A DNA stretch of 64,000 bases from Camelus dromedarius (lineage: Eukaryota). Location: positions 15,376,001-15,440,000 of the forward strand of contig NC_087451.1 of the NCBI RefSeq assembly GCF_036321535.1, read 5' to 3'. The notes below the pieces were generated by a model. It saw only the letters and a program-made list of their open reading frames with translations. It had not been told where the DNA came from and ran no database searches. The position numbers and the translations under genes are program-made. This document shows, piece after piece, positions 52,712 to 52,941 of this stretch; positions within the stretch are counted from its first letter, which is position 1; every line of letters starts with the position of its first letter.

Positions 52712-52941
52712 ATGTCGCCGCTGTGCTCTTGGGTCCTGCGGCTCCTATTTGTGTGGCAGCCTGTGTGGCTGTTCCAGGCAGTTGAGCCCCCTGAACAAAG
52801 TGCTCCCACAAGTGTAAATGTCTGTGAGCTCTGTGTCTGTGGTAATGAGACCTTGTCCTGCGTTGGTCTCAGCCCAGAGGAGAGGCTCCAGGCAGTGCCC
52901 GTGCCAGAGCCCGACAGCTACAACGGCATCTTCACTGTCCT
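52712..52941 (+). CDS. LRRC37: LRRC37 exon 1 (230 nt: signal peptide plus LRR N-cap)
   Basis: CELCVC...LSC...VPVPEP...NGIFTVL motif; gtaaga donor. Confidence 0.9.

What the first reader, a model, noticed from the sequence alone, without database searches (positions are those of the whole stretch)
52712..52941. Mini-LRRC37: the giant exon-1 repeat region is deleted in frame, joining the signal peptide to the LRR N-cap
Seen: exon 1 encodes only 76 codons. A hydrophobic leader ([23 protein letters not shown]) runs straight into [20 protein letters not shown]...NGIFTVL; exons 2 and 3 are intact 72-nt LRR exons with canonical sites. Established (recalled): human LRRC37A exon 1 has roughly 800 residues of Pro/Glu/Thr-rich repeats between these same two motifs. 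The join at PPE/Q fits microhomology between the QA..PPE start and the PE.Q..PTS end (inference). It is the only open reading frame among decayed neighbours, which hints at selection for a compact secreted or membrane LRR protein. Novelty is unverified.
Basis: partly seen in the sequence, partly recalled or inferred. Interest (0 to 1): 0.8.

Follow-up and report, generated by a model that had tools for sequence, protein, structure and literature searches.

The report
Camelid LRRC37 copy lacking exon-1 repeats
Camels and alpacas carry a copy of the fast-evolving, testis-linked LRRC37 gene that lost its roughly 900-residue repeat region in one in-frame deletion; the deletion is real, old and already in sequence databases, but nothing here shows the shortened protein start is used or selected for.

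Summary
**Observation: confirmed.**
- Window 52712-52941 is a 230-nt first coding exon. It runs from an LRRC37-type leader straight into the Cys-rich LRR N-cap.
- Two canonical 72-nt LRR exons follow (55272-55343 and 61815-61886).

**"In-frame deletion": supported.**
- An alpaca long paralogue has an open 2969-nt exon 1 in the same phase. The difference is exactly 913 codons.
- The breakpoint lies within 52784-52795, in a P-E motif found on both flanks.
- The same junction is in a second dromedary assembly, in Camelus ferus and in an alpaca copy. It is therefore neither an assembly collapse nor recent.
- Among about 300 LRRC37 proteins examined, only camelid ones join the leader to the N-cap.

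**Downstream exons.** In a sister dromedary assembly all 13 coding exons give an open 554-aa type I membrane protein. One family-canonical splice donor is lost.

**"Selection for a compact protein": not shown.**
- dN/dS between camel and alpaca is about 0.7, with an interval that includes 1.
- The syntenic alpaca orthologue has lost exon 1. The alpaca copy that keeps it has an N-cap Cys-to-His change and two splice lesions.
- The newest dromedary RefSeq model bypasses this exon.
- Exons 2-13 do show frame conservation.

The protein is already deposited as automatic models. No paper describing it was found.

The parts
52712..52780 (+). Leader (signal-peptide-like) codons 1-23, [23 protein letters not shown]
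   Evidence: Matches the LRRC37 family leader pattern (M-S-x-L-x-L-W...W-Q-x-L-W-L-x-x-Q-A). Best 10-residue Kyte-Doolittle mean is 1.89, within the range of the family leaders picked out by a leader pattern (1.18-2.58; one truncated model scored 0.47). No signal-peptide predictor was available.
52784..52795 (+). Deletion junction interval (GAGCCCCCTGAA, E-P-P-E)
   Evidence: 5' homology to the family's post-leader motif runs through P-P-E. 3' homology to the dromedary long paralogue L006 starts at 52784, ungapped, 92% overall. The interval fits both flanks, as imperfect microhomology.
52781..52941 (+). Rest of mini exon 1: five retained mature N-terminal residues, pre-N-cap stretch, LRR N-cap with four Cys (C38, C41, C43, C50), phase-2 GT donor
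   Evidence: 137 other hits match only residues ~24-76; family consensus.
55272..55343 (+). Exon 2, 72-nt LRR exon
   Evidence: Canonical AG/GT sites, open frame. Used by the RefSeq and GenBank models P0001, P0140 and P0288.
61815..61886 (+). Exon 3, 72-nt LRR exon
   Evidence: Canonical AG/GT sites, open frame.
52151..52711 (+). Upstream flank homologous to the region 5' of the long paralogue's start codon. Holds an in-frame upstream ATG at 52634.
   Evidence: Aligns to L005 12901-13450 at about 75%. The upstream open frame is shown. The C. ferus model P0002 starts at that ATG.
51105..51347 (+). Alternative upstream exon in a CpG-rich block. In the newest dromedary RefSeq model it splices to exon 2 and bypasses mini exon 1.
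   Evidence: P0288 (XP_064351001.1) residues 15-95 read exactly in this frame. Acceptor ag|G at 51105, donor CG|gtcagt after 51347, same phase as mini exon 1. GC 0.69, CpG o/e 0.57.
50857..50897 (+). First coding exon of the same RefSeq model (MKPAAIKHRHHLI...)
   Evidence: Exact match, donor CCT|gtaaac.

Best explanation
This is the 5' end of a camelid-specific LRRC37 duplicate.

**The deletion.** One in-frame deletion inside exon 1, about 2.7 kb or 913 codons relative to an alpaca long paralogue, removed the whole proline/glutamate/threonine-rich repeat region (Pfam PF15779). The breakpoints fall in a short P-E motif. That motif occurs just after the leader and again just before the LRR N-cap. 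This fits a microhomology-type deletion, or unequal exchange between paralogues.

**Age.** The event happened in the camelid stem. It came after this lineage split from the long paralogues (about 10% intron divergence) and before Camelus and Vicugna split (about 4-5%).

**Product in Camelus.** The locus still reads as 13 coding exons and 554 residues. In order these are: leader, N-cap, six LRRs, C-cap, LRRC37AB_C domain, one transmembrane helix and a short tail. That is a compact type I membrane LRR protein. By analogy with LRRC37B, its LRR domain alone could still bind a ligand.

**Constraint.** Exons 2-13 have been kept free of frameshifts and stops while changing faster than the introns. 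This is the pattern of a rapidly evolving but still coding reproductive-type gene.

**What remains open.** It is undecided whether the shortened exon 1 is the first exon used in vivo, and so whether the product enters the secretory pathway. The deletion, its age and the open frame are shown. The topology, expression and function are inferred.
For: **Deletion**
- Window 52151-52770 aligns to L005 12901-13506, and 52794-53400 aligns to L005 16272-16864.
- L005 exon 1 is an open 2969-nt frame with the same donor phase. 2969 minus 230 is 2739 nt, exactly 913 codons.
- The 3' homology to the dromedary long paralogue starts at 52784.
- The family post-leader consensus contains P-P-E.

**Reproducibility and age**
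- The same junction occurs in two other Camelus assemblies and in alpaca L003.
- Camel and alpaca loci are 95.3% identical over 33 kb, against 87-92% to the long paralogues.

**Uniqueness**
- Of 139 phmmer hits, only two camel proteins cover residues 1-76 contiguously.
- Other short-N models in other species start at internal Met and lack the leader.

**Downstream exons**
- All 13 exons have AG/GT sites and give an open 554-codon frame in GCA_000803125.3.
- Pfam finds LRR_8 and LRRC37AB_C (E = 2e-58) and no PF15779. The long paralogue has five PF15779 stretches.
- The AF2 model shows a confident LRR solenoid (pLDDT 80-95 over about residues 70-300) and a helix at 429-457.

**Constraint on exons 2-13**
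- No indels in 1432 exonic nt, against 4.0-7.3 expected from the intron rate (P = 0.0007-0.018).
- No stops, against 3.0 expected among 87 substitutions (P = 0.048).
- Exon divergence is 6.1% and intron divergence 4.0% (P = 2e-4).

**Function by analogy.** The LRR domain of LRRC37B alone binds FGF13A (PMC10754148).
Against: - dN/dS between camel and alpaca is 0.71-0.74 with a 95% interval reaching 1.14-1.28. It is 1.04 in exon 1 and 1.22 in LRR exons 2-8. On the camel branch alone there are only 7 non-synonymous and 3 synonymous changes.
- The syntenic alpaca orthologue (L007) has the 1.65 kb around exon 1 replaced by 7.4 kb of other sequence. It therefore has no leader or N-cap.
- The alpaca duplicate that keeps exon 1 (L003) has three lesions: C41H in the N-cap, an exon-2 donor changed from GT to GA, and a deletion of about 27 nt that removes the exon-12 acceptor.
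- In Camelus the family-canonical exon-10 donor (GAG|GTGAGG) reads GAGGAGAGG. Models rely on a weak in-frame GT 9 nt downstream, or skip the exon.
- Current RefSeq models for dromedary and C. ferus either enter at exon 2 from upstream CpG-island exons or start at an internal Met in exon 5. None of those seen uses mini exon 1.
- Exons 4-13 were read in a sister assembly (99.7% identical), not in the window's own genome.
Confidence: 0.6

Rival explanations
1. The locus is a transcribed but decaying duplicate. The exon-1 frame survives by chance, because it is only 230 nt and the camel branch has changed little. Transcripts start at the upstream CpG-island promoter and bypass it. No leader-bearing mini protein is made.
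For: - RefSeq models skip exon 1.
- dN/dS is not below 1.
- The canonical exon-10 donor is lost in Camelus.
- Exon 1 is lost or damaged in both alpaca copies.
- The A-type reading of exon 9 is full of stops.
Against: - The full 554-codon frame is open with usable splice sites in dromedary.
- Exons 2-13 carry no indel and no stop across the camel-alpaca divergence, despite 87 substitutions.
- The four N-cap and six C-cap cysteines are intact in Camelus.
- One alpaca RefSeq model (XP_072796412.1) does start at the mini exon.
Confidence: 0.33
2. The short exon is not a simple intra-exon deletion. It is a chimera from unequal crossing-over between two LRRC37 paralogues, taking the leader side from one and the N-cap side from another.
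For: - Identity to the alpaca long paralogue L005 drops to about 75% on the 5' side (52151-770). It is 87-90% on the 3' side and 89% further upstream.
- The family sits in tandem clusters on this chromosome.
Against: - The 5' block is CpG-rich and may simply evolve faster.
- The only other camel long paralogue available has assembly gaps across its exon 1, so no closer 5' donor could be compared.
- The resulting protein is the same under either mechanism.
Confidence: 0.2
3. Assembly artefact: the exon-1 repeats were collapsed during assembly.
For: The repeat region is hard to assemble. The dromedary long paralogue L006 has N gaps there.
Against: - The identical junction appears in four independent assemblies of three species, including a 2025 chromosome-level alpaca assembly.
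- No repeat unit remains, whereas a collapse would leave at least one.
- Both flanks are unique sequence.
Confidence: 0.02
4. The short exon 1 is the ancestral, pre-expansion state of LRRC37.
For: None beyond its simplicity.
Against: - Long repeat-bearing exon 1 is found in afrotherian, xenarthran, laurasiatherian and euarchontoglire proteins.
- The nearest relatives of the mini gene are camelid long paralogues that keep the repeats.
Confidence: 0.01

Closest known systems
LRRC37A-type genes (human LRRC37A/A2/A3, mouse Lrrc37a; Giannuzzi et al. 2013, PMC3530683)
   Same: - Leader motif.
- Cys-rich LRR N-cap at the end of exon 1.
- Six LRRs on exons of 72-81 nt, followed by an LRR C-cap.
- LRRC37AB_C domain, single transmembrane helix and short tail.
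- Exon 1 already described as variable in length and repetitive.
   Different: - The whole repeat region (PF15779; 2612-nt exon 1 in human A type, 2969 nt in the alpaca long paralogue) is absent. Exon 1 is 230 nt.
- The central part of the large exon 9 is also not coding.
- The product is 554 aa instead of about 1700.
Human/simian LRRC37B (Libe-Philippot et al. 2023, PMC10754148)
   Same: - Shorter than the A type.
- Exon 9 is split into two small exons: 141 + 293 nt in B type, 152 + 300 nt here.
- GenBank labels the camel model 'LRRC37B'.
- The LRR domain alone suffices for FGF13A binding, which makes an LRR-only ectodomain plausible as a binder.
   Different: - B types arose in simians, so the camel label is not orthology.
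- Human exon 1b is still 1690 nt and carries the LB domain that binds SCN1B. Here nothing lies between the leader and the N-cap.
N-terminally truncated LRRC37 gene models in other mammals (e.g. Otolemur, Dugong, Cavia, Meles, squirrels)
   Same: The N-cap lies within the first 10-60 residues, and products are about 500-560 aa.
   Different: They begin at an internal Met inside or after the repeat region and have no leader. They look like partial predictions or internal starts, not a leader-to-N-cap join.

Membership tests
LRRC37 family | N-terminal leader with the family motif (W-Q-x-L-W-L...Q-A) | tested here: met
   Residues 1-23 align with the family leaders. Hydropathy is in the family range. 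Cleavage was not predicted because no such tool was available.
LRRC37 family | LRR N-cap C-x-L-C-x-C...C at the 3' end of exon 1 | tested here: met
   C38, C41, C43 and C50 are present. 137 of the 139 phmmer hits align over only about residues 24-76; the other two are the camel proteins themselves.
LRRC37 family | Six LRRs plus LRR C-cap on small phase-conserved exons | tested here: met
   Exons 2-3 are in the window. Exons 4-8 were read in the sister dromedary assembly. Pfam LRR_8 E = 6.6e-22. AF2 solenoid pLDDT 80-95.
LRRC37 family | LRRC37AB_C domain (PF14914) and single transmembrane helix | tested here: met
   PF14914 E = 2e-58 over residues 313-453 of P0140. Helix 429-457 in the model. 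Read outside the window, in GCA_000803125.3.
LRRC37 family | Exon-1 repeat region (PF15779) | tested here: not met
   No PF15779 hit in P0140 or in the exon-1 peptide. There are five stretches in the alpaca long paralogue P0150. This absence is the finding itself. The other family features are met.
LRRC37 family | Testis-restricted or testis-dominant expression | not testable with these tools
   No expression data could be accessed. The literature reports ancestral testis expression (PMC3530683).
LRRC37B subtype | LB domain near the N-terminus; simian origin | tested here: not met
   Nothing lies between the leader and the N-cap. B types are reported to have emerged in simians (PMC10754148). 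The GenBank name 'LRRC37B' is automatic.

The most novel reading that the evidence does not exclude
The mini gene is a working, leader-bearing 'LRR-only' LRRC37 that Camelus has kept for more than about 15 million years as a sperm or testis surface protein. It would then be a natural domain-deletion experiment. It would show that the huge exon-1 repeat region is dispensable for at least one LRRC37 function, with alpaca as a natural loss-of-exon contrast.
Probability: 0.25. Interest if true: 0.5.

Novelty: new variant of a known kind. Interest (0 to 1): 0.3.

Why it matters
LRRC37 is a core-duplicon family. Recent work ties it to sperm acrosome function (LRRC37A) and to human neuron excitability (LRRC37B). 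The role of its large, hypervariable exon-1 repeat region is unknown.

A paralogue that keeps the leader, LRR domain, C-terminal domain and membrane anchor but lacks every repeat would be a ready-made natural deletion mutant. Camel (intact) and alpaca (exon 1 lost or damaged) would serve as contrasting lineages.

If the exon proves unused, the locus is one more partly decayed member of a family already known for partial copies and variable first exons.

Tried and rejected
**Look-ups that failed**
- Exact-sequence contig look-ups for P0140, P0159 and P0004 found nothing. The longest isoform P0150, and P0285, worked instead.

**Comparators that fell short**
- The dromedary long paralogue L006 has N gaps across its exon 1, so its leader side could not be compared. 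The gaps were not filled.
- The 5' flank of L005 is only 75% identical and aligns with gaps. Its apparent GCCCCTGA match sits in a different frame and was not used to place the breakpoint.
- I considered whether the junction is an old internal splice (exitron) event. The joined sequence that this predicts from the flanks is 2 nt longer than the sequence observed, so I dropped it.

**A correction to my own reading**
- I first scored the alpaca exon-10 donor as lost (AT). This came from using the camel model's boundary. Alpaca keeps the family donor GTGAGG 9 nt upstream, and it is Camelus that lost it.

**Searches with no useful result**
- The window contains no second LRRC37 copy.
- Pfam finds nothing in the 76-aa exon-1 peptide alone.
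- A motif search for LYZL6 exons found only exon 2.
- The short-length protein search returned only the two camel entries.

**Not done**
- No signal-peptide predictor and no expression data were available.
- The 124-aa spliced product could not be passed by reference, so P0140 was used instead.

Full report
**1.

Window 52712-52941 (+) begins with ATG and reads 76 codons plus two bases without a stop. It ends at a GT donor. The peptide is a hydrophobic leader (residues 1-23) followed directly by [14 protein letters not shown] and the Cys-rich LRR N-cap.

Exon 2 (55272-55343) and exon 3 (61815-61886) are 72 nt each with AG/GT sites. The three exons splice into an open 124-residue frame. The window has no N and no second LRRC37 copy.

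**2. The genome**

The window matches dromedary assembly GCA_000803125.3 (CM016642.2, about 11.42-11.44 Mb) at 99.7% over 21.3 kb. It matches a Camelus ferus scaffold at about 99%. On the minus strand, 31-42 kb holds TRPV3 remains; one ankyrin-repeat exon lies at 37932-38375.

**3. The family, and how unusual the short form is**

I ran a full phmmer scan of 1.8 billion representative proteins with the 76-aa exon-1 peptide. It gave 139 hits.
- Only two cover residues 1-76 contiguously: KAB1265017.1 (dromedary, 101 aa) and EPY74851.1 (C. ferus, 103 aa).
- All the others match only about residues 24-76. In most, this N-cap lies hundreds to more than 5000 residues into the protein.
- Source names confirm these are LRRC37 proteins from many mammalian orders.

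Some gene models in other species do have the N-cap near their start. All of them begin at an internal Met and lack the leader. A length-restricted search returned only the two camel entries.

The literature describes exon 1 as repetitive and variable in length. It is 2612 nt in human A type and 1690 nt in B type (PMC3530683).

**4. It is a derived in-frame deletion**

The alpaca long paralogue (locus L005, RefSeq LRRC37A3-like) aligns to the window on both sides of a gap:
- window 52151-52770 with L005 12901-13506
- window 52794-53400 with L005 16272-16864

From its own leader ATG, L005 exon 1 is an open 2969-nt frame ending at the same phase-2 donor. 2969 minus 230 is 2739 nt, exactly 913 codons.

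Against the closer dromedary long paralogue L006 (92% identity), ungapped 3' homology starts at 52784, the GAG of E25.

On the 5' side, 38 family proteins give the post-leader consensus Q-A-A-(P/Q)-P-P-E-(W/L)-A-L-D-P. The mini protein reads Q-A-V-E-P-P-E and then switches to Q-S-A-P-T-S. The long forms read ...[10 protein letters not shown] before the N-cap.

P-E is therefore common to both flanks. The breakpoint can be placed only within 52784-52795. I treat the microhomology mechanism as inference.

One oddity remains. The 5' flank is only about 75% identical to L005, while the 3' flank and sequence further upstream are 87-90%. A chimera between two paralogues cannot be excluded. L006 could not settle this because its exon 1 contains assembly gaps, which I left alone.

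**5. Age and distribution**

Alpaca locus L003 (XP_072796412.1, 319 aa) carries the identical junction DNA. Camel and alpaca loci are 95.3% identical over 33 kb, against 87-92% to the long paralogues. The deletion therefore arose in the camelid stem, before Camelus and Vicugna split. Four assemblies of three species agree, which rules out a collapsed repeat.

**6. Downstream exons**

I merged two overlapping loci of the sister dromedary assembly. All 13 coding exons map with AG/GT sites and give an open 554-codon frame. It differs by one residue from the database model UPI00057B99F0 (P0140).
- Pfam finds LRR_8 and LRRC37AB_C (E = 2e-58) and no PF15779. The long paralogue has five PF15779 stretches.
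- An AF2 model gives a confident LRR solenoid (pLDDT 80-95 over about residues 70-300), a membrane helix at 429-457 and an unstructured leader.

Two caveats apply:
- The family-canonical exon-10 donor (GAG|GTGAGG in alpaca and in both long paralogues) reads GAGGAGAGG in dromedary. Models use a weak in-frame GT 9 nt downstream or skip the exon.
- The A-type continuous reading of exon 9 is full of stops. Only the split 152 + 300 nt form is coding.

**7. Is it under selection?**

*Substitutions.* Nei-Gojobori dN/dS values:

| Comparison | dN/dS | Note |
|---|---|---|
| Camel vs alpaca L003, all exons | 0.71 | bootstrap 0.46-1.14 |
| Camel vs alpaca L007, exons 2-13 | 0.74 | bootstrap 0.47-1.28 |
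| Exon 1 | 1.04 | 10 non-synonymous, 3 synonymous |
| LRR exons 2-8 | 1.22 | |
| Long paralogues (with each other or with the mini gene) | 0.49 | P < 1e-4 |

Polarising with the long paralogues puts 7 non-synonymous and 3 synonymous changes on the camel branch. It puts 35 and 12 on the alpaca branch.

*Frame.* Exons 2-13 (1432 nt) show no indel between camel and the alpaca orthologue.
- 7.3 indels are expected from the intron rate, or 4.0-4.6 if indels in simple sequence are excluded (P = 0.0007 to 0.018).
- No stops occur, where 3.0 are expected among the 87 substitutions (P = 0.048).
- Exons have diverged more than introns, 6.1% against 4.0% (P = 2e-4).

The body of the gene thus behaves like a rapidly evolving coding sequence. 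There is no evidence of constraint on the shortened N-terminus itself.

**8. Alpaca argues against strong selection on the mini exon**

L007 is the syntenic orthologue. Its flanks align with window 41352-51658 and with 53307 onward at about 95%. The 1.65 kb containing exon 1 is replaced by 7.4 kb, part of it 96.9% identical to the long paralogue's upstream region. Exons 2-13 are intact.

L003 is a recent duplicate, 98.7% identical to L007 from intron 1 onward, sitting in a different context between WAP-domain genes. It keeps the mini exon but has three lesions:
- C41H in the N-cap
- an exon-2 donor changed from GT to GA
- a deletion of about 27 nt that removes the exon-12 acceptor

**9. Is the exon used?**

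This cannot be decided here.
- The newest dromedary RefSeq model (XP_064351001.1) starts at 50857-50897, passes an exon in a CpG-rich block (51105-51347) and splices to exon 2 in frame. It skips 52712-52941.
- Older dromedary and C. ferus models start at an internal Met in exon 5.
- Alpaca models of the orthologue also start in that CpG block.
- RefSeq models of the alpaca long paralogue mostly bypass its leader too, although one isoform uses it.
- One alpaca model does start at the mini exon.

**10. Comparison with known biology**

The LRR domain of LRRC37B alone is necessary and sufficient to bind FGF13A. Its LB domain, which lies in exon 1, binds SCN1B (PMC10754148). Mouse Lrrc37a is reported as required for acrosomal ion homeostasis (bioRxiv 10.64898/2026.09.11.751093). 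A leader-plus-LRR-plus-anchor protein is therefore a plausible binder lacking whatever the repeats contribute. That is inference.

**11. Novelty**

The sequence is already public as automatic predictions. A search of the open-access paper library for LRRC37 together with camel returned six papers, none of them about a camelid LRRC37 gene. I rate it a new architectural variant of a known family, of modest interest until expression is shown.

Noticed in passing
window 41352-51658: This whole stretch aligns collinearly (94.7%) to the alpaca orthologous locus L007. The juxtaposition of the TRPV3 side with the LYZL6/LRRC37 block therefore seems to predate the camel-alpaca split.
   Followed up: partly
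window 37932-38375 (-): An open 147-aa frame with ankyrin repeats (Pfam Ank_2, E = 1e-7). By recall it resembles TRPV3 closely. Earlier notes call TRPV3 destroyed here. I did not test that.
   Followed up: no
window ~45693-49212 (+); exon at 46674-46859: The GenBank annotation of the sister assembly calls a 152-aa lysozyme-family (PF00062) protein here. One LYZL6-like exon reads open. A motif search did not find the other exons. Whether this neighbour is intact or decayed is unresolved.
   Followed up: partly
window 50857-51414: A CpG-rich block (GC 0.69, CpG o/e 0.57) supplies alternative first exons. The dromedary (MKPAAIK...) and alpaca (MYSAHRPL...) RefSeq N-termini both map here but in different reading frames. 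This suggests 5'-UTR sequence read as coding by the predictor.
   Followed up: partly
L004 / merged dromedary locus, exon 10 3' end (outside window): Camelus lost the family-canonical exon-10 donor (GTGAGG now reads GAGAGG). An in-frame GT 9 nt downstream may rescue it, adding three residues (E-R-T).
   Followed up: yes
merged dromedary locus vs L007, exons 2-13: Exons have diverged more than the surrounding introns (6.1% vs 4.0%, P = 2e-4), and dN (0.059) exceeds intron divergence. Either positive or diversifying selection, or patchy gene conversion (exons 9 and 11 are the most changed), could explain it.
   Followed up: partly
L006 (dromedary CM016642.2:7673230-7724661): The dromedary long paralogue shows in-frame stops at positions equivalent to codons 224 and 342 of the mini gene, and several gapped exons. 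It may itself be a pseudogene. Identical GenBank proteins (KAB1265843.1 and KAB1265849.1) suggest a very recent tandem duplication or an assembly duplicate.
   Followed up: no
L005 (alpaca CM108735.1:11900117-11956738): The alpaca long paralogue has an intact leader-bearing 2969-nt exon 1. Even so, most RefSeq isoforms splice from upstream exons into an acceptor just after the leader, giving products without a leader.
   Followed up: partly
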